Shown one piece after another: positions 1 to 58,400 of a DNA stretch of 64,000 nt. A program made the translations under genes and the position numbers. How positions within the stretch are numbered: the first letter of the stretch is position 1; each line of letters starts with the position of its first letter. The stretch is from Haliotis rubra (taxonomy: Eukaryota): positions 310,001-374,000 of the forward strand of contig NW_025767548.1 in assembly GCF_003918875.1 (NCBI RefSeq), read 5' to 3'. Below the pieces are notes generated by a model. It worked only from the letters and a program-made list of their open reading frames with translations, ran no database searches and was not told the DNA's origin.

Positions 1-2026
1 GAGGACCCCTTTGATATGCTCCAAAGGGTTAAGATCGGGGCTCGTAAGATATGTCAGGGGGTGCTTAACTAAGTTCTTTGTGTATATTAACTGCAATAGA
101 TTATATATACCTTCAGCTGTCGATATAAACAACTGCCCCTTTGTGTCCCGGTTTGTGGACAAAACCCGGAAGAAGTGTCTTAGCGACGCCGACTTGTTAT
201 ATGTCTGCAAAGATACAGAGTAAGTAAATATAAAGAGTAAAAGTAAATATAAAACTGATCCCATTAGCAAGTGACCTATGAAGATCCGGGTTGGTATTGT
301 TTTTCAGCAACCTGTGCTTGTCGTAAGAGGCGACTAATGTAATCGGGTGGCCAGACACACATGCCATCGCATCCGAATTGCGTAGATCGATGCCCTTATA
401 TAGCTGGAAGAATTGCCGAGTGTGGCGTTAAACAACAAACAAACAAACATCAACAATGCAGTCATTTCATAATACACCATTAACAAAATTGACAGAAGCG
501 CTTCTTAAATCACTGAGCATTAAAACATATAACGATGCTCTTTGTAATGATAAAATGTCAGGTCGCTGTACAGATGAATTTCCACGTCCTGCTTTTACAG
601 CCGTGTTTCACGACGAAATTGATTTACTAGAGCTCGTTGTTCAGTTAAAGTTGTGATGGCCAGACAATGTGATCATAAAAATGGCAAAATATCGGGGCAT
701 CTAATCCAAGGGAGGCAACTGTACAATGGAAAGACGTCGGATAACGTCTACAGCCACACCACTGTGAGGCTGACATTAAGTTGTAGAAATAAAGTTACCT
801 TAAATTAAAAATATGTAAGAACATAATGGAAAAATATAATCAAGATGGAACCCAGACCAATGGTTAATTCCAGAGCTTGTACAATCACTCTAGGCTTGAG
901 TTGGACCGCCTTATTCATGTATTCTCAAGGGTCTGCGAGACACCGTCCACAACAATACGTCATCACTAGTGTCGTATCTAGTACAGGATTTCGGCTGCAG
1001 GGTCACAGTGAGAACTGTAGTACACAGAACGGGGGATTTGAAGGACTCCACTATCAAGTACGTACTCGATCAGTACCGTATCGTACAACACACTGTAACT
1101 TAATTAACTGGCAGTGGAAAATGTTTTTAAAAACCAAATGTCTGGACGCACATTGACAAAAATTCGTTTGTGTGGTCATTCATCTGGTTGTGCTGGCAGC
1201 ATGACAGCATAAGAAAACCTCTCACGTGTAAACATTGGTGCTTTTCACAATTTCGTTTATCAGTGATAAGAATTAAGGCTGACACAGGAAGCCATGCTGT
1301 TTACATAGCTGTTCGAGAGTCACATAAACAGAACCGTGGGAAAGAAATAATGTGCTCGACCACGCTTCACAACTGCTTCGATGATGTCGTTCCATGATGT
1401 CAAGTCAAAACTAAATGTGAAGTCAGTTTCACATATGGACAAGTCAGCCCAAACCTGAATTTACAGGGAAATACACACGATGATATACTATATCTATATA
1501 GTGCCAACTGTGTTCTATTGTGTCGGTATTCTATAATCTTGAATGTCCAACGCTCGGTTATACGAGTCCGAAACGGGTTTAAACCCTCGGGCCCTCGACA
1601 AACTGGACTCGTTGAAGCTCCACTCGGCTGGCACTGGAAGGAATCCATTATGTAACCAGTTTTCGAGCACAAGCCTAACACGTGACTAAACATAACGGGC
1701 GATTGTTATCGTTCGCACTTTGCTTCTGATGAAAGTGTAGACATACATTCTATTCAACTCAGAACAACCTGTCTTCTAAAATTTCTATCATGTTACACTA
1801 ACTACATACGGCAGGATCTGGCGTTAAGTGGTTTCGTGTAAATTCAGTTAATATCACTACGCTAGCTGTTGCTACCCGACGTACCGTACACACGTGCAGC
1901 GTAATATGCCAAATGGGTGAGAGTGACTGGATTGCCCGACATCCACAACATGGTGACTTCTACATTAGCCCACTAATGTATTATATGTGTGAAATGTAGA
2001 TCTATGCTAGCGGACAACCTATCTAC

Positions 2027-5000
2027 CTGGAGCGACACGCCGTAGTGATGAAAGTTCGGCGTGACATTCTCGCTGGAAAGGATGGCGGCCAGCTGGGATG
2101 TCAGTCCTCCAAACAGCCTGCTTGTGTTGTAACCTGTAGGTAAACAAGAGGGTAGATTTACTTATACCGGTACCACTAATCGTATTTTCTGCGCATGATC
2201 GGAAGGAATATAAGCTTAGCAGGGTTAGGGTTAGACTCCTATATACAACAACCGGAAGTAGCTAAAACAATAGTACCGGTATAAGTAAAGTGCTCCCAAA
2301 GAGAACAAGCAAAAATCTGAAAATATGCTCGAACAAAATGACAATAACACCATATTTCAGCTGTACCATATGACGGCATGTAGTCATCTCTGCAGTAATT
2401 GCCTACCTGGGTGTAGGATGAGGGGTAGGCTGACGTTGTAGGCCACTGACGAGTGCAGGTAATCGTGGCCTGTACTCAGGTACGTCAGCAACTGGAACCC
2501 CTCACACGTGCCCCACAGGGGGAACACCTCGCCCTCCGAGTTGGCCTATAATACACACAGGAATTAGGGCGAGTGACGTAGTGAATTTATTTACAAGTCA
2601 TCGGTCAATGTAGATTCCATCTATATCACGTTCCACTGAATAATATATAAATTGGACTCGGGCCCTATACAACATTAAACTCAATCACTCACTCACTCCA
2701 TGTCGTACCTGGGACATAAATACTGAAATGTGAACATACCTTAACAGCCAAGTCATAGATGATTCTGGCAGCCTTGGAGTAGTCACTGGTGCGGATGCCA
2801 CCATGGCCCCCAGGAAACAGAACCCTGGTACATGAAGTAAACAACATGGCGTAAGGGGATCTGAGGTGCCATGTTTACGATAAAAATATACATTCGGCTA
2901 TCGACCATCAACATGCAATTCCTGCTCTGGTTACGAGGTAACCAAGTCACTCGAACGTTTATTATGGTACGGTAGACGCCACAACACCGACTCAAAGTAG
3001 GAACCAACCACACAAAAATATATACTACGTCTATAACGAACTGATGGATATAACGTACTGATGGATATACGAACTGGCGGATATAACGAACTGACGGTTA
3101 TAACGAACTGGCGGATATAACGAACTGACGGCTAAAACGAACTGACAGATATAACGAACTGGCGGATATAACGAACTGACGGATATAACGAACTGATGGA
3201 TATAACGAACTGGCGGATATAACGAACTGACGGTTATAACGAACTGGCGGATATAACGAACTGATGGATATAATGAACTGGCGGATATAACGAACTGGCG
3301 GATATAACGAACTGACGGATATAACGAACTGATGGATATAACGAACTTGCGGATATAACGAACTGACGAATATAACGAACTATTACTTTTATTCCCACCC
3401 TTTTGCTGTATATTTCAGTGTAACTAACGAACTACGGCCATAACGATGTAAAATTAGTGGTCCCTTTGAGTTCGTTACAACCGTAGTGTCCTCAGTTAAC
3501 GAAAACTACAACATATTTGTAACGACAAGACGGGCACAGGACAGCGCTAGAGACCAAAATCTTTCTCTTCATTTGCATGTTATGCTTGTTCGTTCGTTGT
3601 TTAACGCTGCACTCAGCAATATTCAAGCTATTTGGCGGCGGTCTGTAAATATTCAATCGAATCGGGACCACACAAACTACACATTTGGGATACGATGACA
3701 TGTGTCAACAAAGTCAGCGAGCCTGACCACCGGATCCCAGTAGTCGCCTCTTACGACAAGCATGGGTTGCTGAAGACCAATTCTGACCTGGATCTTCACT
3801 GGTTACATATGCATGCGTTGTGATGGGCAACGGGTACAGAATCACAAGAGTGACACTCAGAAACAATCGGGGGTGCCGTCAACAAAACGATGACCTACCC
3901 ATTGATCTTGGAGAAGAGCTGTTCATAGTACTGTGGGGTTTCTCGCACACTGAAAACAGATTTATTCAGATACTCAGATACTTCAGATATTACAGGTGAC
4001 ACTCTAATACAAGGGAATGTATACGGTCATGTCTCAGGCAAATGATCCCTACAAGAAACGGTTATTGTATGGTGATGTATTTGAGGCGGGTATCACAGTC
4101 TGTAGTACATGCATTATATAAAGGGTATATCCCGACAAGTTAAGTGTACATGGAGGGACGCAGATTCATTGTAGCACTAATCAGCACAACGGTTTGATTT
4201 GTTTGCTGTTTAACGCCACTCTCAGCATTATTCCAGCTGTATGACGGCAGCCTACAGCATGTCTGGACCAGACAATCCAGTGATTGACGTCATGAGTATG
4301 TCACGCGTTTGGGAAACGACGACATGCATCAACCAAGTCGACCAGCCTGACCAGACAATCTCGTTAGTCGTCTCTTTGAACAAGCGTGTGTTGCTGAAGA
4401 CCAATTTATCCCTCACGGGTCAACAAGCACAGAGACGGTGAAGTGATTAGGGATTAAAATCAACCGATCGTGGCACGCCTAAGGGCCACAACTCTACAAA
4501 GAGAATATCAGCACCTTTATCAACAGGGTTCCGCATGTAGTTACAGCCAAGCAAATGTATTCAGTGAGAATTACTATGGTGGCACGTCCAACCCGGTGAA
4601 TTGAATGTTTGCTCACCGGATGGGCACGACCCTCGCCCCAGACTGTTCTAAGTACTTGACATAGTTGGCTGATATAAGGGTGTCTCCATGTCGCTTGCTG
4701 CTGGCGGCCTGGGTAATCACCCCCTGTCAAATACACCATCTTATACTGCTAGGCGTATTTTCAACTAGTGTAAGTCCAGATTCCGTTACTGCACATCTTA
4801 CATTTTCGTCATACTGTTTATATACTATTCCAAAAAAAAAAGAAACGCATAACACAGAAATCTAGAAAAGTATAATACTTTATGGATAATGCCAATCAAA
4901 CAGAACACAGAAATCTGTTGCGAAAATGTGTTTTCAAACATGTATAACTCGTACACAAATAGACTTTAGTACATGAATTTTTGCATCAGTTTAGAAGAAG

Positions 5001-7790
5001 GAAATGTCTATACAACCAAGTGGATAATTTTATATAACGGAGATGTTGAGCGCCATGGTGACGACGTAGCACGGGCTCGACGTCGGATCTCCTGGCTCTC
5101 AGTCCAATCTCTCTGAACCTGTTCCGTACAGTTTGACCGGATATCCTCCGAAGTCCAGGCACCCTGGCTGCTGTGCTCTCACCCGTGGCAGTACGATCAG
5201 GCAAATGTAGTACCCGGATGTACCGATCTTGGGCTACAGTGGTGACTCGAGGTCTGCCTGTACGGGGACGGTCATTTATTATGCCTGTTTGGTTGTAAAG
5301 AGCTGTAAGCCGTGATATCGTGCTCAGACTAACATTCAGGCGCCTGGTAACAGAAGATTGGTAATCTCCAGCGTGCATTCTTTCAATGGCGATGTTCGGT
5401 GTCGCAACGTCAAGACGTGGCGTAATGATTTGACCTTGAAACTCCTTCAAAACTAATGCCGATTTCCGAAAGTAATCTGGATTTTTATAGCCAGACAGTG
5501 CACTCTCTCTGCTGAACAATTTCAACTGGAAGGTGATTTCTGTTGCGTTGTGGTGATGCCTTTTTAATCCTTGTAAGAAATCTCATCAAAATCAACATTT
5601 CAGGTAAAGTCGGTTTTCTCACTTGTGCAATTGTGTAAAATCATGTGATCAACACTTTTGTAACATATTTTGACGATTGTTTGAACACAATAGGTAATTA
5701 AAAAAATTGGTCCAAACATATGATCATACTAAAAGCATACTGGAATACACATGTAAAGCACGTGGTTCAGACAATATCCCAAGAAAAATGGGTGGCATGT
5801 TCATGTGCTGCGAAGGCGCCATGTAGAATATTTATAACGTGCTTTTCCAGGCTTCATATCCTGCTCAAAGCGCACAAATATTACCTGATTATTATTACCC
5901 CGGATAACCAAAGCTGCCTGTGAAGCGCTAGAAAGTTAATAGTCACATGACCAATCCCACCGGGTACCCATTCTCTCCTGGGTGAGCAAAGGCTATGGTG
6001 AGACCACGTGTATCACATGTGCTTCGTTGTGGTGCAGGACTGAAGTCCTTGAAACTGTCAGGAGTCAAGCTGCCAAACACGGTCACCCATCCCAAGGGCT
6101 CTACGCGCAAGGTTGCTCAAGTTCAACTGATTTGTGACCTGAGCTCTACGCACAGGTGGACACATCACCGTTGTGCAGTTGTGCTACAGTTTGCTGAACT
6201 GAATTAACAGACTACATTACTAAACATTTACTTTTCTTGACATGATGAAAATCTCGACTTGAGGACATGGCGTTGGGTTCATTGGTCTGGTGAAAGTCGC
6301 TATATTTAACACGGTGCCCCGACGGTAATGTGATAGTGTGGGCTGCGTTTCGTATGGATATGTTTACAATGCCAGGGACATTCAAGGGTCAACGTTACCG
6401 ATCGGAAGTATTGGATACTGCCGTCATGTCACATTGTGATAACAATTCTCTTGCTTGTCATCCGATATTCATGAATGACAACGAGGAATGATGACATTTT
6501 TTATGGATATACAACTTCTTTTATTTTGTGTACCAGGGGTGGATACAGCTTTTTGAGAAAGGGGTGGGGGGATGCACACTATTGAGAAAAGGAGGGGTGC
6601 ACACTTCAATTTCACCCGAGTTTCAATGGTCATTTAACAAACTTTCAGCACAAAGGGTGCGCACCTTCTGGATCCGCCTATGTGTACATCCTTAAAAACT
6701 GTCATCGTTCTTCATCTACTCAACTTCTAAAGTGCCCATCAAAGAAATGAATGACAACGCCAGACCACGCACGCCGCCGCGGCCATTTGCACAACAACGC
6801 CACCGAAACATTAACATGACACGCAAGGAGATGAAATGAACACCATCGAACATCTTATTACAGTCTTGAACGCCAAGTTCGAGCTAAAGATGCCCCTGTT
6901 CAAAATGTGCAGGAACATACACTCTATGGGGAATGGCAGAGGATTCCTTTGCTGAGAGTTCCACCCTTGATTTACAGTATGAGGAGACTGGGCCACCCTT
7001 GCCCCAAAACAGCCTTGCTAAAAATGCCTCTCAACATTAGTGTAGGGAATTGGTTAAAATCTCATAATTGATGATTGGTTCATTACAACCGATCGATCAT
7101 CGAAAATAATTGGTTAGCGTCATTTATGAAATTTGTTAATGCACATAAACATAAGGAAAAAAACGTAGTTCTTTTGGGGCTTTTTGGCAAATTTCACATC
7201 TTTAAAGGATGACTAGTATGTTAGGAACATAAATTTCTTGGAGCCTTTAAGATAAATTCAATCATGACTTGAAACGAGCTTGTAGTCCTTACAAAATGTA
7301 ACAGACAAAACCAACAATGTGAAAAATATTGTTCATGAAAACAAGTGTTCCAAAATTGGTTGTGTTCGATTATGAGAAATTATGATCGATTGCTTGGTCG
7401 TTTAGTCACTACGACCAATCTTCGATTATTTCAATTAATCGGACCACCACTACTCCACATTGCTACACTACAACGTTGCAAGAGATAGCTAAATGTACAT
7501 AATGAACGCCACAACTTTGGATAAGGATGACACGTAGATATATGGAATGACGGACAGAGTGACTGCGACAGACTAATACAGGAATCATGTGGTTTGAATT
7601 TTCTATTTCACACGTACGCACCAAATACATGTTATCATTATCGGTTCTGGATTTGTAAAGTACAGCTACATGTAGACCTACCGTTTTAATGAGTGGTATG
7701 CTTACCAATGACCGGTCTGTCTGTACAAACGGTTGCTCCAACAACGACCAAAGCTGCCCCGCCACACAACACCATCAACCACCACGACAT
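2027..7790 (-). CDS. GGH: Gamma-glutamyl hydrolase paralogue A (exons 1-6; remainder off the left edge; possible frameshift/pseudogene)
   Basis: Exons 7790-7706 (MSWWLMVLCGGAALVVVGATVCTDRPVIG, signal peptide), 4723-4617 ([34 protein letters not shown]), 3949-3899 (VRETPQYYEQLFSKING), 2824-2740 (VLFPGGHGG..IIYDLAVK), 2545-2407 (ANSEGEVFPLWGTCEGFQLL, catalytic Cys) and 2133-2027 (..[15 protein letters not shown]). All introns GT-AG. The exon1/exon2 junction carries one extra G. Confidence 0.9.
3031..3382. repeat. 17-bp minisatellite (GGATATAACGAACTGRC) in GGH-A intron 3
   Basis: About 20 tandem units seen directly, probably within a MITE. Confidence 0.9.
4821..5720 (-). mobile_element. Tc1/mariner transposon remnant (N-terminal HTH) in GGH-A intron 1
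   Basis: ORF 4986-5525: LNVSLSTISRL..DRPRTGRPRVTTVAQDRYIR..ISGQTVRNR..GLRARR. TA-initiated TIR-like end at 4821. Right boundary uncertain. Confidence 0.85.
6180..6850 (+). mobile_element. Decayed Tc1 transposase (DDE region) interrupted by nested insertions
   Basis: Degenerate ESR and (D)DNARP motifs. ATGAATGACAACG is duplicated at about 6471 and 6748 around a 264-bp insert. Confidence 0.6.
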
Positions 7791-7971
7791 CCTCAATTGC
7801 ATCCTCCCTGCACACTGAAACACTGGTTCCGAAACAGAAACACCACGTGACCACGTCATATCAGGAGGATGGTGAGTTGGTCAAGGACATCCGTATCCCG
7901 ACAACAGATATATGTCTTGATCTGTTTGACTGGCATTTAGAAGTTGGTGACTAATAAGAAAGTAAGATTGT

Positions 7972-8045
7972 TTATGGATAACAACTTCTTTTATTATATA
8001 TGATACGACGTTTCGGTATGGATTCTTATACCGTTGTCAAGTAAG
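7972..8045 (-). ncRNA. Penelope-like terminus with minimal type I hammerhead ribozyme motif (U3-A8 variant)
   Basis: Minus strand reads TAC-TTGACAA-C-GGTAT-aagaatcc-ATACC-GAAAC-GTC-GTA, followed by AATAAAAGAAGTTG. Confidence 0.6.
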
Positions 8046-8249
8046 AGTGAAGTACTACAGCACAGAACAGACTTATATACATGAACAGGGATTAAGTAAT
8101 AACAACATGTAGGTATCCTACTTTCAGATATACGTCTTGATCGTATGCGAGTGTCTAGAGGGCATTGGCGTCTGACACTATTTCTAGGAGAAAATATATC
8201 TATGTCACGACCTACCAATTGCAAATAATACATATCCACGGGAACATGG

Positions 8250-8920
8250 CGAGATATGTTTGAGTGTATGAACAGGTATAGGAACATGACACGAGGTGTT
8301 TGAATGTATGAACAGGAACGTGACGTGAGGTATTTGAGTATGTTGGCATTAATAGGAACGTGACACGAGGTGTTTGAATGTATGAATAGGAACGTGACAC
8401 GAGGTGTTTGAATCTATGAATAGGAACGTGACACGAGGTGTTTGAATGTATGAATAGGAACGTGACACGAGGTGTTTGAATGTATGAATAGGAACGTGAC
8501 ACGAGGTGTTTGAATGTATGAATAGGAACGTGACACGAGGTGTTTGAATCTATGAATAGGAACGTGACACGAGGTGTTTGAATGTATGAATAGGAACGTG
8601 ACACGAGTTGTTTGAATCTATGAATAGGAACGTGACACGAGGTGTTTGAATCTATGAATAGGAACGTGACACGAGGTGTTTGAATGTATGAATAGGAAAG
8701 TGACACGAGGTGTTTGAATGTATGAATAGGAACGTGACACGAGGTGTTTGAATGTATGAATAGGAACGTGACGTGAGGTGTTTGAGCGCATGAAATGAAA
8801 TAGGAACGTGACAGGAGGCGTTTGAGCGTATGAAATGAAATAAGAACGTGACACGAGGCGTTTGAGTGCATAAAATGACATAGGAACGTGACGCGAGGTG
8901 TTTGAGTGTATAAAATGCTT
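8250..8920. repeat. 29-bp minisatellite (GAATAGGAACGTGACACGAGGTGTTTGAATSTAT-like)
   Basis: Tandem units seen directly; explains ORFs 8212-8871 and 8618-8947. Unit length is approximate (29-34 bp). Confidence 0.9.
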
Positions 8921-9025
8921 CATTGTCAAAACATTGTCATATTTCAAGAATATTTTCCGATATTAAGAATGAGGTACAAAATCGGCTTCAACATATGACG
9001 TCCATATCTTCGTTGATTTGAATGT

Positions 9026-10898
9026 CTAATGTTTCTTCTTGTTACAGCAGCATGTCAACACGTCTCCCTCTGCACACGCTACGTCCTGAGAGAGTTTGGG
9101 ATACTTCCTGGACAAAGCTGCCACCATAGCGTCAGTACATTTGGAATCATTTCCCGCCATCCCTTTAAGCAGACGACACCATCCCACTTCAGAAATGTCA
9201 TTTCTCCATATTGTTTCGTATGTACAAGAATCAATGCAGTTCTGTTGGTACAAGTGATCCACGATGTCACGAACATCGACGATGTCTGTGAGGTTACAGA
9301 CAACACACTTTTCTCTTATCTTCGTCTCCTCTTTGTCCTCGGTAGACGGCCGACAATTCAAGTGAGGGTATTCCGCTATCAAATGGTTCTTGAACTTCAT
9401 GAACTGGTCAGAATCACATCGTTTAATTCTGGACACAAGCTCCCTGACCTGGCACTTTCTTGTGGAGTGGGACCGAATGGTATCTTCGTCAGACTGAAAC
9501 AACACATCGTCTTGAACAAGTCTGTCGATGAATAGTCCATTTTTCAGATCCAAATTGTTGACTAACATCAAATGATTATGGCGAAGCCATGATCTATTTT
9601 CTTTTTGGTGAACTGTGTCTGGTACACCTACAAAACAAACCAGTAATAGCATCAGTCCAAAATGTCCCATGACAAGTAATTGTGTTGATCTAAGATACGT
9701 GTAACTTTGACAACCGAATCATGTATGAAAGTTAATTAGCGAAGCGTATAATTGTACATTATTTTCGAGGAAGGAAGTTGAGAATATCTTAATATAGCTA
9801 TAACTTTAGTAAATTCGTTGTTACAATCATACGTGTAACATTCAGAACCTGAAACATTTATGAAAGTTAATTAGCGAAACGTAATTCTACATTTCTTTTG
9901 AGGAAGGAAGTACAGAACTGCCCCAATGTAGCTATAATATATATACAGAGCCAACTACACACTCATCAAGTGTTGTTTCGTATTAGGTTACGCGTTGCGG
10001 TGATGCCTTCCTGTAGAATGTGTGAAAGATGCAACTTGTATGTAGTGTAAGAAATAAAACAAATCACACCTGCTTTTGTTTTGACAATGTCGTCGGCAAC
10101 GTCGTCCTGTGCGTCAGATGAAGATAACGTTTCCGACTCCCTGAACGTATCACGTACCAGCTCAGCCTCCATGCACCGCGTCTGAACGTGGTCCAACACC
10201 GCCGACAGACCATGGAGCCGACAATCCAAAGACCGCACCTGATCGTCTGTATACGACCTGCAGTCAGACTGGTGACTCGACAACGCCTCGTTAATGATCA
10301 CGGAAGTCTTTCCTTGAGCATCTTTCAACATGCGAATTTCGTCAAAAAGGACGTTTTGGGAAGTTAGCACGACTGTGAGTAATTGTTTTATTTCCTTTAT
10401 GTCAGTATAGTGGTCACAGGGGCTGGCTAGTGCTCCAGCTTCAGTGGTATCTTCACCATGATTGTACAGACATCCTGGCTCATTTCCATCACGAAGAACT
10501 GGCTGCGTCACTATTCCCCGATGTACTGAGTGAGTCATAGGTGACACGCCCGCGTTTCCCGTCAACTGATTCTGCTGCTGATCAGCCTGTGTTGGAGGAC
10601 ATACTTCCCCGCATTCGTCCACCTGCTCCTCCTGTGCTGCCTTCTTGCAGTCCTTCTGTCCGGCGTCTTCCTGTGCTCTATCGTGTTTATCATTACCTCC
10701 AACACTATGTTTGGTTGCGTCACTGTCTGTTCCCTCACGTTCTGAATCATCTTGCAACCATTCCCCGTCACCATGACGCGAAATACGGGATGGCGCCAGT
10801 TCTTGTGCAACATCGATCTGTCCTGGATTAAATGCTGGCTGGCGTTGTTTGGACGGTGTCAAGGAAGGCTCCGGGGCTTTCTTCGCTTGTGACGCCAT
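9026..10898 (-). CDS. Tandem CARD/death-fold domain protein with a disordered and coiled-coil N-terminus
   Basis: Exon 10898-10070 (MASQAKKAPE..KTKAG; ATG directly follows a pyrimidine-rich cag acceptor, so an upstream exon is likely) joins in phase 1 to exon 9627-9026. The last exon has two CARD-like helical units: LRHNHLMLVNNLDL..IDRLVQDDVL..DEDTIRSHSTRKCQVRELVSRIKR and LTDIVDVRDIVDHLYQQNCID..YETIW..RLLKGM..AMVAAL. Domain call is by motif recognition only. Confidence 0.7.
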
Positions 10899-11020
10899 CT
10901 GATCCACAAACAAGAATGAACGTTTATGTTTACATTTTCAACTATATTAAACAAATATACCATATATATATGTATATGTTATGGTATTCGCCCATATAAT
11001 ATTGTACTACCCATTTTAAA

Positions 11021-11437
11021 TATACTACCCATCAAAAGTTTAGACTCACTAGTATAAATGTATCCGCTTACTTCAGTCAACTGTTCTAGACTAGATTGTG
11101 CAAAATATTCCATACTGTTTATAGGTACTGTTTACACATGAACTGATGCATTGTAAAACAAATTCGTAACGTTGAAAAGATTATTTTCAATAAATGATGA
11201 AACTCGGTGAAAATTGGCAAATTCTTAACAAAACTTTACACCAAAACGCAGCTGTTCACATGTACGATATTTGCACATGCTTTTCAGCAATTTGATGCAT
11301 GATCCTCGTGCAAATCATCTGCATAAGGTCTGCAGTTGGTTCCCCCAAGTTAGTGGAGAAATTCATCTTCGATGTAACCACATGTATATACATAACATAG
11401 CATTTAAGTGAGTCTAAACTTTTGATGGGTAGTATAT
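11021..11437. mobile_element. Tc1-type MITE
   Basis: 30-bp TIRs TATACTACCCATCAAAAGTTTAGACTCACT and its reverse complement, TA-flanked. Confidence 0.85.
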
Positions 11438-54200: not shown

Positions 54201-55184
54201 TTGTTTCAATATTTTCATAAATAAAACTTTTAGACATGTTTTTGTGTGACATGCAGAATTTCCCTGTCCATTGTCAGGCACTCACGCAAATGAGTGACCC
54301 CCTCTCAGGTAGTCACTTGTACGTGTAACCCTCTTGCGTACACATTACATCCTCTACTGATGAGGGACAATACAAATGGCGCCAGCTAGATGACAGTGAA
54401 TTTGAAGGAAAACCAAGTTTATGGATAGTCAACTTCTTTATTGCTATGAGTGCGACGTTTTGGTGTAGGTACTAACACTGTTATCAAGCAAGTGATCATG
54501 GTGTAAACGTCGCACTCATAGCAATAAAGAAGTTGACTATCCATAAACTTGGTTTTCCTTCATCTATACAACTTCTAAAATGCCTCTCAAAGAAGACAGT
54601 GAGTTTGACAGTTGTTTCCCTTTAAAGTCTTTAATGTATAGGGGATGACATTTTATTAAAATCAAAATTTTTCGGTCACTTGTCTTCAGAGAAGGGGGTC
54701 TTTCTTACAAAATGTAAAACAATAATAATTAAAAAAAGGGTTCTTGATTATTTTCTTGAAAACCAAAGAGCTGCGCTGTCTACCACTTTTCAAATGTTTG
54801 GAGAAGCTTACTTTGATCCATTCGTGTCAACACATTCCTCAGCATCCTACGTCTAGCACTATGCATACTGGCGTCGGGCATCTGTAGAACCTGTCTGGGG
54901 CCCTGTCTGCCTGGAGCAGACGGTTTCTGTGGGGGAGCTTTAGGTCCACTTGCTGTCTGGCTCGGTGGATTTAGGGACATTGACACTTGATTATCTTGGC
55001 GAGCTCGCCCTTTTCCTTGTACTTTGCTTTCGTATTCTGCAACATTGTTAAAAACTCGAACGTCTGGGAACTGAACAGGGTCATTAGTCGAATACAGAGC
55101 TCGTAAGGGATCAAAATTCGATGAGAATAGATTCAGTTCGTCGTCACTGACATCATCCGACACGTTATCCGTGGGGGCCGCCAT
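51232..55184 (-). CDS. LSM11: U7 snRNA-associated Sm-like protein LSm11
   Basis: Exons 55184-54812 (LNLFSSNFDPLRALYS..VFNNVAEYES..RNVLTRM), 53656-53517 (GPLSILRRCV..WTRS..VRGILRGYVIAFDKHFNL, Sm1), 52310-52248 (AMIDVDEVY) and 51558-51232 (RHVNQLFIRGDNVVCV, Sm2). The split Sm motif is typical of LSm11. Confidence 0.93.
52520..52980 (-). mobile_element. SINE with Nin/Deu-like core and L2-like tail in LSM11 intron 2
   Basis: CCCTTGGGATCATACA..AGGTACCCATT motif; the tail resembles the LINE 3' end at 61430-61500. Related pieces at about 5830-6000 and 47166-47240. Confidence 0.5.
54392..54608. mobile_element. Penelope-like terminal remnant with inverted arms and degenerate hammerhead
   Basis: About 55-bp inverted repeat; TSD-like GACAGTGA(A/G)TTTGA on both sides. 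Confidence 0.6.
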
Positions 55185-55422: not shown

Positions 55423-58400
55423 ATGCCGCCGAAGAAGAAGGGTAAAAAGGGTAAAAAAGGAAAGAAAGGTGGAAAGGGAAAAGATGATGCATCCAATGAA
55501 CACGAGAGACCAAAAACGCCAGAACCAACTGAGAAAGAAATATTATTGCAGCAAGAGTAAGTTTTAATATCTAAAGCCTTAAAATGTCTACACGATTCTG
55601 TACTAACCATGTAAGGTAGAGAGTGTATTTATAAGGCTACCCTAAATGTAGACATTATGCAGGTCCTCTCGTTTATAATGAATTCATAGACTTACGTATG
55701 TATGAATTTTCAGCGACTGTAATTTTCCTTGAAGCAGTAGATTTGCTTGAATTTTTTTCTTTCATTTCCAACTTTTAAAACATCTTTGATGACAATTTTA
55801 ATGACAGTCAGTTAGTTTCATAGAAAATGAACAGGAGATGTGAACCCCTGCTGTAGAGTCATTATTACGGTGAGGTTGGCATGACTGGCTGATTATCAAT
55901 ATGACATGTAATTGTGTTTGTTAATAAACATTGAGGCTGTCAACATTATGCATCATGATCTAGAAAAATAGTTTTTTTAATGTTTATTTCTAGGTTAGAG
56001 AAGGTCACAGAAGAACTTGATAATGCCAAGAAAAAGGTTGAAGATTTGTATCCTTGAAAATGGAGCAGCCATTATTGTGGTGCAGCCTGTTTCTCACCAT
56101 CCCTAATCCTACTCATGCAGTATAGGCCTACATGTAATTGTCAGTCGGTAACAAATGAGATGTGGAACACATTTTCCCATGTTTCCACACTAATTACCCA
56201 GTGAATTTGAATGAGAGAAAAGCATGAGGATGTTTTCTTGATATCAAATTTTGTTTATCATGATAAAAGGCAATTGGGATATTTTGCATGTCAGTCAGTG
56301 AGTGTCATAGAAAATAAGCTGCTGTGGATTACCATGAAAGTTTCTTTGTAATTTTCACAATTGTTATGATCTGCAACAAAATGAATATCTTCTAATCCCA
56401 GATTTGATTAGATTATGATTCTTGCTCACTCAGCTTATTATCCATGCTCATGGGTCCCACCAAAGAGGTAGTGCATCATGTTGGACTTTCTTCTTCCTGT
56501 TAAAGAGAAATAATGTTCAAAATGACATAAAACCCATATGACTTGTTTCGAATAACCTACAAATTACAGAAGCTGTTATTTTCATTAGGAAAAAAATTAT
56601 CGGTTGTGGCAATGCTATCTGTGCCCAAATTTACCTTATCTTGTCCGATTTGCTAAACCTGATCTGTAGCTGATACTGCTTAATGTATTACATATTCATA
56701 AGATGACAATATCTGGAAACTCCAATCAATATGACATGGGATCGCTTACTTTGCTATAGGTAGAGTATTACAAACTAAGTATATCCTGCAAACAAGATAA
56801 GATTCTTGAGTATAACTGTTCAAGCCTTGCATTGTGAGCATCAAGTCTTGAAGTGTTAATGAGATATTTTATAATTACTTAACTCACACGCTCAGACGAC
56901 AAGAGAATGACTGGTTGCAACAGGAGGCTCACAAAGTGCGAGTGGAGAGTGTAAGTACTGACACAGACTGTTATATATGTGTAGTCTTGTAGTTTCTATA
57001 TGGACCATTCCAGTATTCTAGTTGTGACTCACTCACGGCCAAGCTTATATTTGGGATGTGCATTTATCTTCCATTTTGCTTTCTTCGTTTTCTTGCCATT
57101 CAAGAACGTCGGTATCTGGAACGAATTGAAGCTTCAGCAATATATATTAAACCTATTTATAGATTTTGATGGTCTGTATTATTTTATATTATTTATGTGT
57201 GTTACATATTCCAGCATGAGTACATGAGTTACATGGAGAAGAAGACCAGCAAGCGTCAGACTGCAATCATCACACTGAGCGACCACAACAAGCAGGAGAT
57301 ACGCAACATTCAGATGCAGAAACAGCTCATGGAGGAGGAGTTCGAAGAGAAAAAGAAAGGTGAGCAGTTAGTTGCTAATTGTAGATGCGATACTGCTATA
57401 AATTCATGTTGATCGTTTAGACTTTGTATCCTCTGGATTGTAGGAATCTTAGTGTGTAGATGACAAATCAAGGAAAACCAAGTTCTATGGATAGTCAATT
57501 TCTTTATTGCAATGAGTGTGACATTCTGGTGTAGGTACTAACACAGTTATCAAGCAAGTGCACCAAGTTCTATGGGTCGTCAACTTCTTTATTGCAATAA
57601 GTGCGAAATTTCGGTGTAGGTACTAACACCGTTATCAAGCAAGTGACTATCCATTGAACTTGGTTTTCCTTCATCTATACAACTTCTAAAATGCCTCTCA
57701 AAGAAGATGACAGTTCAGACATCAATTACATTGCCATTGAAGTCGAGTCTTCAAGGCTCCTGAGTATGTCTTCGTAAACAAATCATAGTAAAATATCCAT
57801 GTGACATGGTTGTCCTTTCATTTGGATGTTTTTTCTACAATAGATGTTTTTATCACTCAGGGATGGATTTTGGGTCGCATGTCTTTGTCATGTAGCTCCC
57901 TAAGCAAACGCAGCAAGCACCCATGTATTCCATGTATTTCTGTGATTGGGCAGATTATTTGTTTGTGTTTCTAAATGGAATATATTTTTGATAAATATGA
58001 ATATAATATCAACTCTGTGTCTGCTGTTATTGATATCCACTGAGAGATTCAGATGTTGATATCTACAGTGTCTCCTGTGTTGATATCCACTGCATCCTCT
58101 GTTGATATGTTGTGTGTCTTCAGTGTTGTTCATATGAACTGTGAGTCTTCTGATGTTGATATCACTTTGAGTCCCCTGTTGTTGATATCAACTGTCTCCT
58201 GTTGTTGATATCCATTGCCTCCTGTTGTTGATATCCACTGTCTCCTGTTGTTGATATCCACTGCCTCCTGTTGTTGATATCCACTGTCTCCTGTTGTTGA
58301 TATCCACTGTGTCTCCTGTTGTTGATATCCACTGCCTCCTGTTGTTGATATCCACTGTCTCCCTGTTGTTGATATCCACTGTCTCCTGTTGTTGATATCC

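What the first reader, a model, noticed from the sequence alone, without database searches (positions are those of the whole stretch)
7972..10920. CARD-CARD gene whose apparent 3' end is a Penelope-type hammerhead ribozyme plus polyA signal: possible retroelement-mobilised immune or death adaptor
Seen: an unrelated spliced gene with two CARD-like domains interrupts the GGH array. On its own strand, the stop (9026) is followed by a minisatellite, then a hammerhead-like motif (8043-8004; predicted cleavage after GUC at 8007), then the first AATAAA I could find (about 7995-7990). Established: Penelope-like elements carry minimal type I hammerheads in their terminal repeats and can retain introns. 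Inference: either the gene was moved here as Penelope cargo, or its mRNA 3' end and stability are set by a co-opted ribozyme.
Basis: partly seen in the sequence, partly recalled or inferred. Interest (0 to 1): 0.72.

Follow-up and report, generated by a model that had tools for sequence, protein, structure and literature searches.

The report
Penelope retroelement tail beside abalone CARD gene
The hammerhead-like motif is real, but it belongs to a 199-base truncated tail of a very abundant Penelope-like retrotransposon that landed recently between an old abalone tandem-CARD gene and its neighbour, so the gene was not carried there and nothing shows that the ribozyme sets its 3' end.

Summary
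The window is Haliotis rubra. A two-exon minus-strand gene (10898-9026, LOC124262105, 476 aa) encodes two CARDs. It is followed by a 34-nt minisatellite, a hammerhead-type motif at 8043-8004 and the first AATAAA at 7995.

The motif is not an isolated oddity. Window 8116-7918 is the 5'-truncated 3' tail of a Penelope-like element (PLE; reverse transcriptase plus C-terminal GIY-YIG endonuclease) with thousands of copies. It fits the published PLE "minimal hammerhead" class:
- a U3-A8 core;
- a bulged base before helix II;
- a G10.1-C11.1 pair;
- a palindromic ACGU in place of helix III.

Rfam models do not detect it. The pattern occurs about 7,500 times in this genome against 44 in a reversed control, with compensatory changes in helix II.

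The cargo idea is refuted. H. asinina and H. rufescens have the same GGH-CARD-GGH order but lack the PLE piece. H. asinina shows a clean empty site, which gives a 17-bp target duplication in H. rubra.

Ribozyme control of the mRNA end is unlikely, because single minimal hammerheads are reported as inactive. Use of the PLE's AATAAA as a distal poly(A) site stays open and needs transcript data.

The parts
10070..10898 (-). CARD gene, coding exon 1 (276 codons + 1 base). Acidic low-complexity N-terminus, then two long predicted helices (residues about 161-258).
   Evidence: Translation. 100% identical to the NCBI protein P0001. No Pfam family. The helices come only from a low-confidence model.
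9628..10069 (-). Intron (GT...AG, phase 1).
   Evidence: Sequence read. The join is confirmed by the 476-aa database protein.
9026..9627 (-). CARD gene, coding exon 2 with TAG stop (9028-9026). CARD1 is about 9359-9592 and CARD2 about 9080-9283, with an invariant CxxC between them.
   Evidence: Pfam CARD. (model and CARD structural matches). (paralogue alignment; C107 and C110 invariant).
8919..9025 (-). Conserved proximal 3' UTR block ending in AATGAA (8924-8919). Candidate proximal poly(A) signal.
   Evidence: The alignment to H. asinina runs unbroken from the coding region to 8919. The same TTTTGACAATGAA is present in H. rufescens and H. asinina.
8278..8911 (.). 34-nt minisatellite, 17.9 copies.
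   Evidence: A related array lies at the same place in H. rufescens and partly in H. asinina.
8125..8141 (-). Upstream copy of the 17-bp target-site duplication (ATCAAGACGTATATCTG), followed by 8 filler bases AAAGTAGG (8124-8117).
   Evidence: The single-copy site in H. asinina L079 (about 10576-10592) aligns to both copies.
7918..8116 (-). 5'-truncated 3' tail (about 199 nt) of a Penelope-like element, in the same orientation as the CARD gene. The last 2-4 bases overlap the target duplication.
   Evidence: at least 1,900 candidate copies, 96-99% identical. (other copies continue 5'). (upstream part encodes RT + GIY-YIG).
8004..8043 (-). Minimal hammerhead motif. Helix I is UAC/GUA. The core is UUGACAA (U3...A8) with a bulged C. 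Helix II is GGUAU / 8-nt loop / AUACC, followed by GAAA and the palindrome CG, then UC. Predicted cleavage falls after C at 8007.
   Evidence: The descriptor features come from PMC4209133.
7990..7995 (-). AATAAA inside the PLE tail. It is the first canonical poly(A) hexamer after the CARD stop and is conserved at this place in five PLE families.
7940..7988 (-). Conserved PLE 3'-terminal stem: GAAGTTG (7988-7982) pairs with CAACTTC (7946-7940).
   Evidence: Kept in PLE families A, B and D, with a G-U change in D. Present in the minimum-energy fold.
7905..7921 (-). Downstream copy of the target-site duplication (ATCAAGACATATATCTG).
7706..7790 (-). First coding exon of the next gamma-glutamyl hydrolase (Peptidase_C26) gene. 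Its ATG at 7790 is only 128 nt beyond the PLE end.
   Evidence: ATG position, signal peptide, donor. (aligns to the start of the Peptidase_C26 gene called in H. rufescens).

Best explanation
A Penelope-like retrotransposon (RT plus C-terminal GIY-YIG endonuclease) that is very abundant and recently active in Haliotis rubra inserted one 5'-truncated copy of its last 199 nt. The insertion lies in the 1.2-kb spacer between an old, syntenic tandem-CARD gene and the next GGH gene.

How it happened (inferred from the anatomy and from published PLE biochemistry): target-primed reverse transcription started in the element's 3' region, stopped early, and left 8 filler bases and a 17-bp target duplication.

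What the tail carries: the element's own minimal hammerhead motif (U3-A8 class), a conserved AATAAA and a terminal stem. The hammerhead is therefore a property of the transposon, not of the CARD gene.

What follows for the gene: it was not mobilised by the element. As a lone monomeric minimal hammerhead, the motif is most likely inert in any CARD read-through transcript.

What is shown: the PLE identity, the motif class, the insertion anatomy and the empty sites. What is inferred: the lack of ribozyme function.
For: PLE identity:
- Window 8116-7918 matches at least 1,900 candidate copies in the genome at 96-99% identity.
- Other copies continue 5' into an ORF ending in a GIY-YIG motif.
- One copy with an 882-codon frame has Pfam RVT_1 at E 2.8e-8.
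- Its nearest Atlas clusters are RT + GIY-YIG + HTH_animal proteins of animals, score 0.97.
- Inverted 5'-truncated partner copies occur as described for PLEs (PMC8557442).

Motif:
- It meets the published PLE minimal-hammerhead features.
- It is unique in the window, with 0 hits in 200 shuffles.
- Genome counts are 6,290 U3-A8 and 921 C3-G8 matches, against 8 and 4 in reversed controls. Only 346 of 7,557 have a mixed core.
- Helix II shows compensatory changes: covariation 0.257 against 0.144 in shuffles, reached by 0 of 500.

Insertion:
- H. asinina has a single target copy that aligns to both flanks.
- H. rufescens also lacks the piece.
- Synteny is GGH-CARD-GGH in both species.
- No other PLE part lies near the gene.

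Inactivity:
- Single minimal hammerheads gave no detectable cleavage (PMC4209133).
- Hammerhead cleavage was not needed and not seen in RNA-seq for the Anolis PLE (PMC11167929).
Against: - No transcript data were available, so I cannot show where the CARD mRNA ends.
- H. rubra has no canonical AATAAA or ATTAAA between the stop and the PLE, whereas H. rufescens and H. asinina have one within about 60-420 nt of the stop. Read-through to the PLE signal is therefore possible.
- This copy carries a paired G-to-A and C-to-U change that keeps helix I paired. That could hint at retained structure.
- Rfam hammerhead models do not score the motif.
- Cleavage was never tested.
Confidence: 0.88

Rival explanations
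1. Exapted poly(A) site. After the H. rubra lineage lost the ancestral proximal AATAAA/ATTAAA (the minisatellite now starts right after AATGAA), CARD transcripts read through the minisatellite. They are then cleaved and polyadenylated at the AATAAA supplied by the PLE tail. This would also stop read-through into the GGH promoter 200 nt further on.
For: - The first canonical hexamer after the stop is the PLE's, at 7995.
- Relatives have their own canonical signals upstream of or within the region that is minisatellite in H. rubra.
- The PLE lies in sense orientation, with U-rich sequence downstream.
Against: - A conserved AATGAA closes the conserved 105-nt 3' UTR block in all three species and may be the real signal.
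- The hexamer is conserved inside the PLE, whose genomic copies extend about 70 nt beyond it. It therefore need not act as a poly(A) signal even for the element.
- PLE tails are common: four sites in this 64-kb window. The position is therefore unremarkable.
Confidence: 0.25
2. Co-opted ribozyme. The hammerhead self-cleaves CARD read-through RNA after C8007 and so sets the mRNA 3' end or its stability.
For: - The core, helix II and helix I are intact in this copy, with a compensated helix I pair.
- Double compensatory TAC/GTA variants are about five times more frequent than expected from the single variants: 4 observed against 0.7 expected.
Against: - The motif has no helix III and needs a second copy to form an active dimer. 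None lies nearby.
- Single motifs were inactive and dimers weak in vitro (PMC4209133).
- No reads ended at the hammerhead site in Anolis (PMC11167929).
- The motif is absent from orthologues.
- The enrichment falls to 3 against 0.7 once the window's own copy is left out.
Confidence: 0.03
3. Penelope cargo. The CARD gene was transduced or retro-mobilised to this place by the element.
For: Only the sense orientation of the tail downstream of the gene.
Against: - The gene sits at the same place in two other Haliotis species that lack the tail.
- The target duplication brackets only the 199-nt piece.
- About 900 nt of conserved UTR and minisatellite lie between the stop and the piece.
- There is no PLE 5' part in the window.
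- There are no dispersed copies of the gene.
Confidence: 0.01
4. The insertion matters for the downstream gene instead. The PLE tail, 128 nt upstream of the GGH start codon, alters that gene's promoter or 5' UTR. PLE terminal repeats are reported to hold an internal promoter.
For: - Position and sense orientation relative to the GGH ATG at 7790.
- The flank just below the insertion is conserved among species at 72-82%.
- Schostak et al. 2008, as cited in PMC8557442, for the internal promoter.
Against: No expression data. Only the last 199 nt of the element are present.
Confidence: 0.08

Closest known systems
Minimal hammerhead motifs of metazoan Penelope-like elements (Cervera & de la Pena 2014, PMC4209133), especially the U3-A8 variant of Schistosoma Cercyon PLEs
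   Same: - U3-A8 core covariation.
- One unpaired base between A9 and G10.1.
- G10.1-C11.1 pair.
- No helix III, only a palindromic ACGU.
- Short helix I.
- Location in the PLE terminal repeat.
- Thousands of mostly solitary, 5'-truncated copies in families with compensatory changes.
   Different: - The host is a gastropod.
- Helix II is 5 bp here (6 bp in a sister family), against the 7-8 bp reported for Schistosoma.
- Helix I is only 3 bp.
- Activity is untested.
Hammerhead of the Poseidon element PAc of Anolis carolinensis (PMC11167929)
   Same: Same layout: core, bulged base, helix II, then GAAACGUC.
   Different: - PAc has the C3-G8 core, and its motif overlaps the ORF start.
- Here the motif lies about 210 nt after the endonuclease stop and about 90 nt before the copy's 3' end.
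Rfam hammerhead families (Hammerhead_1 RF00163 and relatives)
   Same: The same conserved boxes in the same type I order.
   Different: No score even at E<=10. The models expect helix III and a C3-G8 core.
Non-LTR retrozymes (PMC7229834; bioRxiv 10.64898/2026.07.22.740005)
   Same: Hammerhead-bearing, PLE-related sequences. An 85-nt x 2 tandem of a sister motif lies at 57477-57645 in this window.
   Different: The piece at the CARD gene is a solitary truncated tail of an autonomous element, not a tandem array.
Tandem-CARD signalling modules (RIG-I/MDA5 2CARD) and single CARDs (Apaf-1, CARD9)
   Same: - Two consecutive six-helix bundles.
- Domain 1 matches Apaf-1 CARD at Z 13.6.
- The whole model aligns to RIG-I 2CARD over about 160 residues.
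   Different: - The CARDs are C-terminal, behind a disordered acidic region and two long helices.
- There is no helicase, NACHT or kinase domain.
- A CxxC motif lies between the CARDs.
- The word-index search returned only Haliotis orthologues.
- The relative orientation of the domains differs (rmsd about 12 A).
Transposon-derived polyadenylation signals (general knowledge, not tested here)
   Same: A sense-oriented element fragment brings an AATAAA downstream of a gene.
   Different: Use of the signal has not been shown.

Membership tests
PLE minimal hammerhead (min-HHR) | Conserved core boxes (C/U)UGANGA/(A)A ... GAAA ... UH in type I order, with position 3 able to pair with position 8 | tested here: met
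   UUGACAA ... GAAA ... UC at 8043-8004. In the genome, 95% of 7,557 matches are U3-A8 or C3-G8.
PLE minimal hammerhead (min-HHR) | Unpaired base between positions 9 and 10.1, and a G10.1-C11.1 pair | tested here: met
   A bulged C, then a G...C closing pair. Both features are listed in PMC4209133.
PLE minimal hammerhead (min-HHR) | Helix II supported by compensatory changes among families | tested here: met
   A-U to G-C and U-A to C-G double changes. Covariation score 0.257 against 0.144, reached by 0 of 500 shuffles, and slid controls at most 0.128. More families are seen.
PLE minimal hammerhead (min-HHR) | Palindromic positions 15.2-16.2 in place of helix III (allows a dimer) | tested here: met
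   A-CG-U. The same GAAACGUC is found in the Anolis PLE.
PLE minimal hammerhead (min-HHR) | Lies in the terminal repeat of a Penelope-like element | tested here: met
   About 210 nt after the endonuclease stop in families A, B, D and E.
PLE minimal hammerhead (min-HHR) | Self-cleavage | not testable with these tools
   Needs in vitro transcription of monomer and dimer constructs.
Rfam hammerhead families | Score at or above the gathering threshold of a curated model | tested here: not met
   No hit at E<=10 in 171 nt or in 4.5 kb. None at gathering in the window. None over the cut-off in the genome sample.
Penelope-like element, canonical EN+ type | Single ORF with reverse transcriptase followed by a C-terminal GIY-YIG endonuclease | tested here: met
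   RVT_1 at E 2.8e-8 in an 882-codon frame. A GVVY...YVGET...R...EH motif at the C-terminus. The nearest Atlas clusters carry RVT_1 + GIY-YIG. The Pfam GIY-YIG model itself did not score.
Penelope-like element, canonical EN+ type | Partial tandem or inverted 5'-truncated partner copies, and 5'-truncated solitary copies with target duplications | tested here: met
   Inverted partners in L015, L022 and L073. The window copy is truncated and has a 17-bp duplication. These features are described in PMC8557442.
Penelope-like element, canonical EN+ type | RT groups with PLE/telomerase RTs in a phylogeny; clade assignment (Penelope/Poseidon, Neptune, Nematis) | not tested
   No reference PLE proteins were at hand.
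CARD (death-fold) | Match to the CARD profile and a six-helix bundle | tested here: met
   Pfam 59.1 bits against a 23.9-bit cut-off. Domain 1 matches the Apaf-1 CARD at Z 13.6, rmsd 1.5 A. Domain 2 alone gives 21.2 bits, just under the cut-off, but is modelled as a six-helix bundle.
Retro-mobilised gene (PLE cargo) | Gene absent from the orthologous site of relatives, bracketed together with the element by one target duplication, and present as dispersed copies | tested here: not met
   The gene is present and syntenic in two species. The duplication brackets only 199 nt. There are no dispersed near copies.
Transposon-derived poly(A) site | Transcripts of the host gene end 10-30 nt after the element's hexamer | not testable with these tools
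   The hexamer is present at 7995. No transcript data could be reached.

The most novel reading that the evidence does not exclude
In the H. rubra lineage the ancestral canonical poly(A) signal of this tandem-CARD gene was lost. The newly inserted Penelope tail now supplies the gene's main poly(A) site and terminator, just upstream of the GGH promoter. Its hammerhead may add a second, ribozyme-based way of ending read-through RNA.
Probability: 0.2. Interest if true: 0.45.

Novelty: new member of a known kind. Interest (0 to 1): 0.25.

Why it matters
The result turns an intriguing reading into an ordinary one. A hammerhead next to a gene in this genome is best taken first as a Penelope tail, because such tails are everywhere: about 7,500 intact motifs in the genome and four tail sites in this 64-kb window alone.

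Three things are worth keeping:
- Haliotis rubra carries a large, young PLE family whose minimal hammerheads are mostly of the U3-A8 covariant class and escape Rfam. Annotation pipelines will miss them.
- A dated, species-specific insertion with a clean empty site offers a natural test of whether a PLE tail can act as a terminator or poly(A) site.
- The host gene belongs to a little-known, fast-evolving tandem-CARD family. The word-index search returned only Haliotis orthologues, and the family may be of interest for mollusc innate immunity.

Tried and rejected
- Rfam cmscan on 4.5 kb, on 171 nt, on the whole window and on four other PLE copies, plus RF00163 over the genome, gave no hammerhead. 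I read this as a limit of the models, not as absence, because the published descriptor fits.
- Thermodynamic folding of 8060-7915 was no better than shuffles, z 0.01. It is uninformative.
- Pfam on the 107-aa endonuclease piece gave nothing. PDB by sequence found only a generic RT.
- The word search with exon 2 alone was blank because of the length filter. Exon 1 then found the full protein.
- AlphaFold on the full protein with two sequences was unusable, pLDDT 34. The CARD region with paralogues worked.
- Helix I covariation is only weakly supported: TAC/GTA seen 4 times against 0.7 expected, or 3 without the window's copy.
- The notes of earlier scans held nothing on this.
- After no more genome DNA could be fetched. 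Flanks of the other hammerhead families and of other insertions near genes were therefore not examined.
- I did not build or search a joined exon model of my own. Exons were searched apart by reference, and the full-length sequence was used only as the database entry P0001.
- No consensus of the element was built.
Full report
**What is in the sequence**

On the minus strand an ATG at 10898 opens a 276-codon exon. It ends at a CAG|GT donor after 10070. An AG acceptor before 9627 opens a 200-codon exon that ends with TAG at 9028-9026.

I searched the exons apart, by reference, and made no joined model of my own. Exon 1 found a 476-aa NCBI protein, "uncharacterized protein LOC124262105 [Haliotis rubra]", at 100% identity. 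Its length and sequence equal exon 1 + one split codon + exon 2. The window is therefore blacklip abalone, and the two-exon model is right.

**The protein**

- Exon 2 scores Pfam CARD at E 4.4e-16 with two stretches.
- Scanned apart, residues 289-366 give E 5e-11. Residues 392-459 give E 3e-4, which is 21.2 bits, just under the 23.9-bit cut-off.
- A first AlphaFold run on the whole protein with two sequences was useless, pLDDT 34.
- A second run on the CARD region, aligned with two orthologues and eight paralogous exons of the same genome, gave pLDDT 75.8 and two helical bundles.
- All top Foldseek rows are CARDs. By VIA-align, bundle 1 matches the Apaf-1 CARD at Z 13.6, rmsd 1.5 A over 87 residues. 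RIG-I and MDA5 tandem CARDs align over about 160 residues.
- Exon 1 has no Pfam family. It is acidic and low in complexity, with two long helices predicted at low confidence.
- The only orthologues the word-index search returned are in H. asinina (86% identity in the CARD region) and H. rufescens (79% there, 58% in exon 1).
- H. rubra has at least a dozen distant paralogous exons at 21-38% identity, sharing an invariant CxxC between the two CARDs.

I read it as a lineage-restricted, fast-evolving tandem-CARD adaptor. That reading is inference from the domains.

**Downstream of the stop**

- A 34-nt minisatellite (17.9 copies) fills 8278-8911.
- The first canonical AATAAA or ATTAAA is at 7995-7990. 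Before it there is only an AATGAA at 8924.
- A script that codes the published minimal-hammerhead descriptor finds exactly one match in the 64 kb on both strands, at 8043-8004 (-), with C17 at 8007. It finds none in 200 shuffles.

**What the motif belongs to**

Searching the genome with 8277-7940, and then with 8130-7500, showed that window 8116-7918 is a dispersed repeat. There are at least 1,900 first-look candidates, and the 40 that were scored are 96-99% identical.

Other copies do not start at 8116 but continue 5'. About 210 nt upstream of the motif they close an ORF whose last 107 residues carry a GIY-YIG pattern, GVVY...YVGET...R...EH. That protein piece has more than 4,500 first-look candidates.

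One copy with an unbroken 882-codon frame has Pfam RVT_1 at E 2.8e-8 in the middle and this endonuclease at the end. Its nearest ESM-Atlas clusters (score 0.97) are about 830-aa animal proteins with RVT_1, GIY-YIG and HTH_animal.

Copies often carry an inverted, 5'-truncated partner. RT + C-terminal GIY-YIG, inverted partners and 5' truncation are the hallmarks of canonical Penelope-like elements (PMC8557442). The piece in the window is the last 199 nt of such an element, in the same orientation as the CARD gene.

**Is the hammerhead real?**

Rfam says nothing, even at E<=10 in a 171-nt search. But Cervera & de la Pena (PMC4209133) describe exactly this class in metazoan PLEs:
- no helix III, only a palindrome at 15.2-16.2;
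- one unpaired base between positions 9 and 10.1;
- a conserved G10.1-C11.1 pair;
- a short helix I;
- in Schistosoma, a U3-A8 variant of the core.

The window motif reads UAC / UUGACAA / C / GGUAU-loop-AUACC / GAAA / CG / UC / GUA and has each of these features. The hammerhead of the Anolis Poseidon element ends in the same GAAACGUC.

Genome-wide counts are as follows.

| Core class | Matches | Reversed control |
|---|---|---|
| U3-A8 | 6,290 | 8 |
| C3-G8 | 921 | 4 |
| Y3...R8 together | 7,557 | 44 |

So only 346 matches (4.6%) have a mixed core.

The matches fall into families whose helix II differs by compensatory changes, for example GGUAU/AUACC, GGUACA/UGUAUC, GAUACA/UGUAUC, GACAU/AUGUC and GGUGU/ACACC. 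Its covariation score is 0.257 against 0.144 in shuffles (0 of 500 reach it), and slid controls reach at most 0.128.

Between PLE families that are only about 62% identical in the endonuclease, most of the 3' UTR is unalignable. One block is kept:
- the hammerhead;
- an AATAAA 12-14 nt after it;
- a GAAGTTG...CAACTTC stem;
- a TGCCANTCAAA end.

The motif is thus a genuine member of the PLE minimal-hammerhead class at the level of sequence and covariation. Catalysis is untested.

**Was the gene carried here?**

No.
- The H. rufescens orthologue lies between two Peptidase_C26 (gamma-glutamyl hydrolase) genes on the same strand. The H. asinina orthologue is likewise followed by one.
- The coding exons, the first about 105 nt of 3' UTR, the minisatellite region and the start of the next GGH gene all align. 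The 199-nt piece does not.
- In H. asinina a single ATCAATACATATATCTG aligns both to 8141-8125 and to 7921-7905 of the window. The flanks continue on either side. That is an empty site.
- H. rubra therefore has a 17-bp target duplication (16 of 17 identical), plus 8 filler bases (AAAGTAGG) at the truncated 5' junction.
- H. rufescens also has one copy of this stretch and no insert.
- No other PLE sequence, coding or 5', lies near the gene.

The only close second copy of the gene is on the 22-kb contig C1853. It is collinear with window 15816-6391 at 78-94% identity, includes the same insertion with the same junctions, and has a broken CARD exon. It is a haplotig or a segmental copy, not a retrocopy.

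It is met.

**Does the tail set the mRNA end?**

This could not be tested, because no transcripts were within reach. The points against a ribozyme role are:
- the gene worked before the insertion;
- the motif has no helix III and no partner copy nearby;
- single minimal hammerheads gave no detectable cleavage and dimers little (PMC4209133);
- for the Anolis element, cleavage was dispensable and no RNA-seq reads ended at the site (PMC11167929).

This copy does keep helix I paired through a G-to-A plus C-to-U double change. Among 2,905 motifs with this helix, the counts are 2,816 TGC/GCA, 48 TAC/GCA, 37 TGC/GTA and 4 TAC/GTA. That is 4 doubles against 0.7 expected, or 3 without the window's copy. 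This is a weak hint only.

A poly(A) role for the AATAAA is more credible.
- H. rubra has no canonical hexamer between the stop and the PLE.
- H. rufescens has AATAAA about 410 nt after the stop, or about 180 nt if its own SINE-like insert is discounted.
- H. asinina has ATTAAA about 145 nt after the stop.

Against this, all three species share TTTTGACAATGAA at the end of the conserved 3' UTR block (8924-8919 in the window). AAUGAA is a known weak variant signal (my own knowledge).

PLE tails are also too common for the position to mean much. Besides 8116-7918, the window has decayed tails at 57645-57477 (two 85-nt units in tandem), at 54414-54596 (an inverted pair), and perhaps at about 6520.

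**A neglected neighbour**

The PLE piece ends 128 nt upstream of the ATG (7790) of the next GGH gene. Its first exon (7790-7706) encodes a signal peptide and the start of the hydrolase. The insertion therefore sits in that gene's proximal 5' flank, which is conserved among the three species just below the insertion point. Any regulatory effect could fall on GGH as easily as on the CARD gene.

**Verdict**

Mobilisation is refuted, ribozyme control is unlikely, and poly(A) exaptation is open at about one in four or five.

The thing itself is a young, 5'-truncated Penelope tail with a 17-bp target duplication in an intergenic spacer. It is a new member of a known kind.

Noticed in passing
window 57477-57645 (-): Two tandem 85-nt units. 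Each holds a sister-family minimal hammerhead (TTGATAAC GGTGT...ACACC), decayed at the GAAACGTC box, followed by AATAAAGAAGTTG...CCATAGAAC. This is a retrozyme-like mini-array of PLE tails.
   Followed up: partly
window 54414-54596: An inverted pair of PLE tails of the same sister family, meeting near 54505. The hammerhead of the minus-strand copy is decayed (CGG to CAG, CCGAAAC to CCAAAAC).
   Followed up: partly
G000 contig C1853 (L035-L037), 8-9699: A 22-kb contig collinear with window 15816-6391 at 85%, 78% and 94% identity. It has the same PLE insertion and a CARD exon full of stops and small indels. It is either a poorly polished haplotig or a decaying segmental duplicate, and beyond 9699 it no longer matches the window.
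   Followed up: partly
L078 (H. rufescens) about 11100-11335: A SINE-like insert of about 230 nt, flanked by a repeated TTTTGACAATGA, sits in the 3' UTR of the H. rufescens orthologue at the conserved AATGAA. Each species has remodelled this UTR differently.
   Followed up: no
window 9026-9627 (-); alignment A2: The tandem-CARD paralogue family of H. rubra (at least 12 loci, three clustered on contig C924) keeps an invariant CxxC between the two CARDs. Most members also keep a C-x-C at the C-terminus. This may be a metal site.
   Followed up: no
genome-wide: H. rubra holds about 6,300 U3-A8 and about 920 C3-G8 minimal hammerhead motifs ending in GAAACGTC. None reaches an Rfam threshold, so standard annotation would report no hammerheads in this genome.
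   Followed up: partly
window 8278-8911, L078 12391-13274, L079 9151-9329: The 34-nt minisatellite downstream of the CARD gene is kept at the same place in H. rufescens (period about 40) and partly in H. asinina. It is therefore older than the species split.
   Followed up: no
window 7850-7880 (-): The conserved stretch just upstream of the GGH start holds TGACGTGGTCACGTGGT, a CRE-like half-site plus an E-box-like CACGTG. This is probably the GGH core promoter, right below the PLE insertion point.
   Followed up: no
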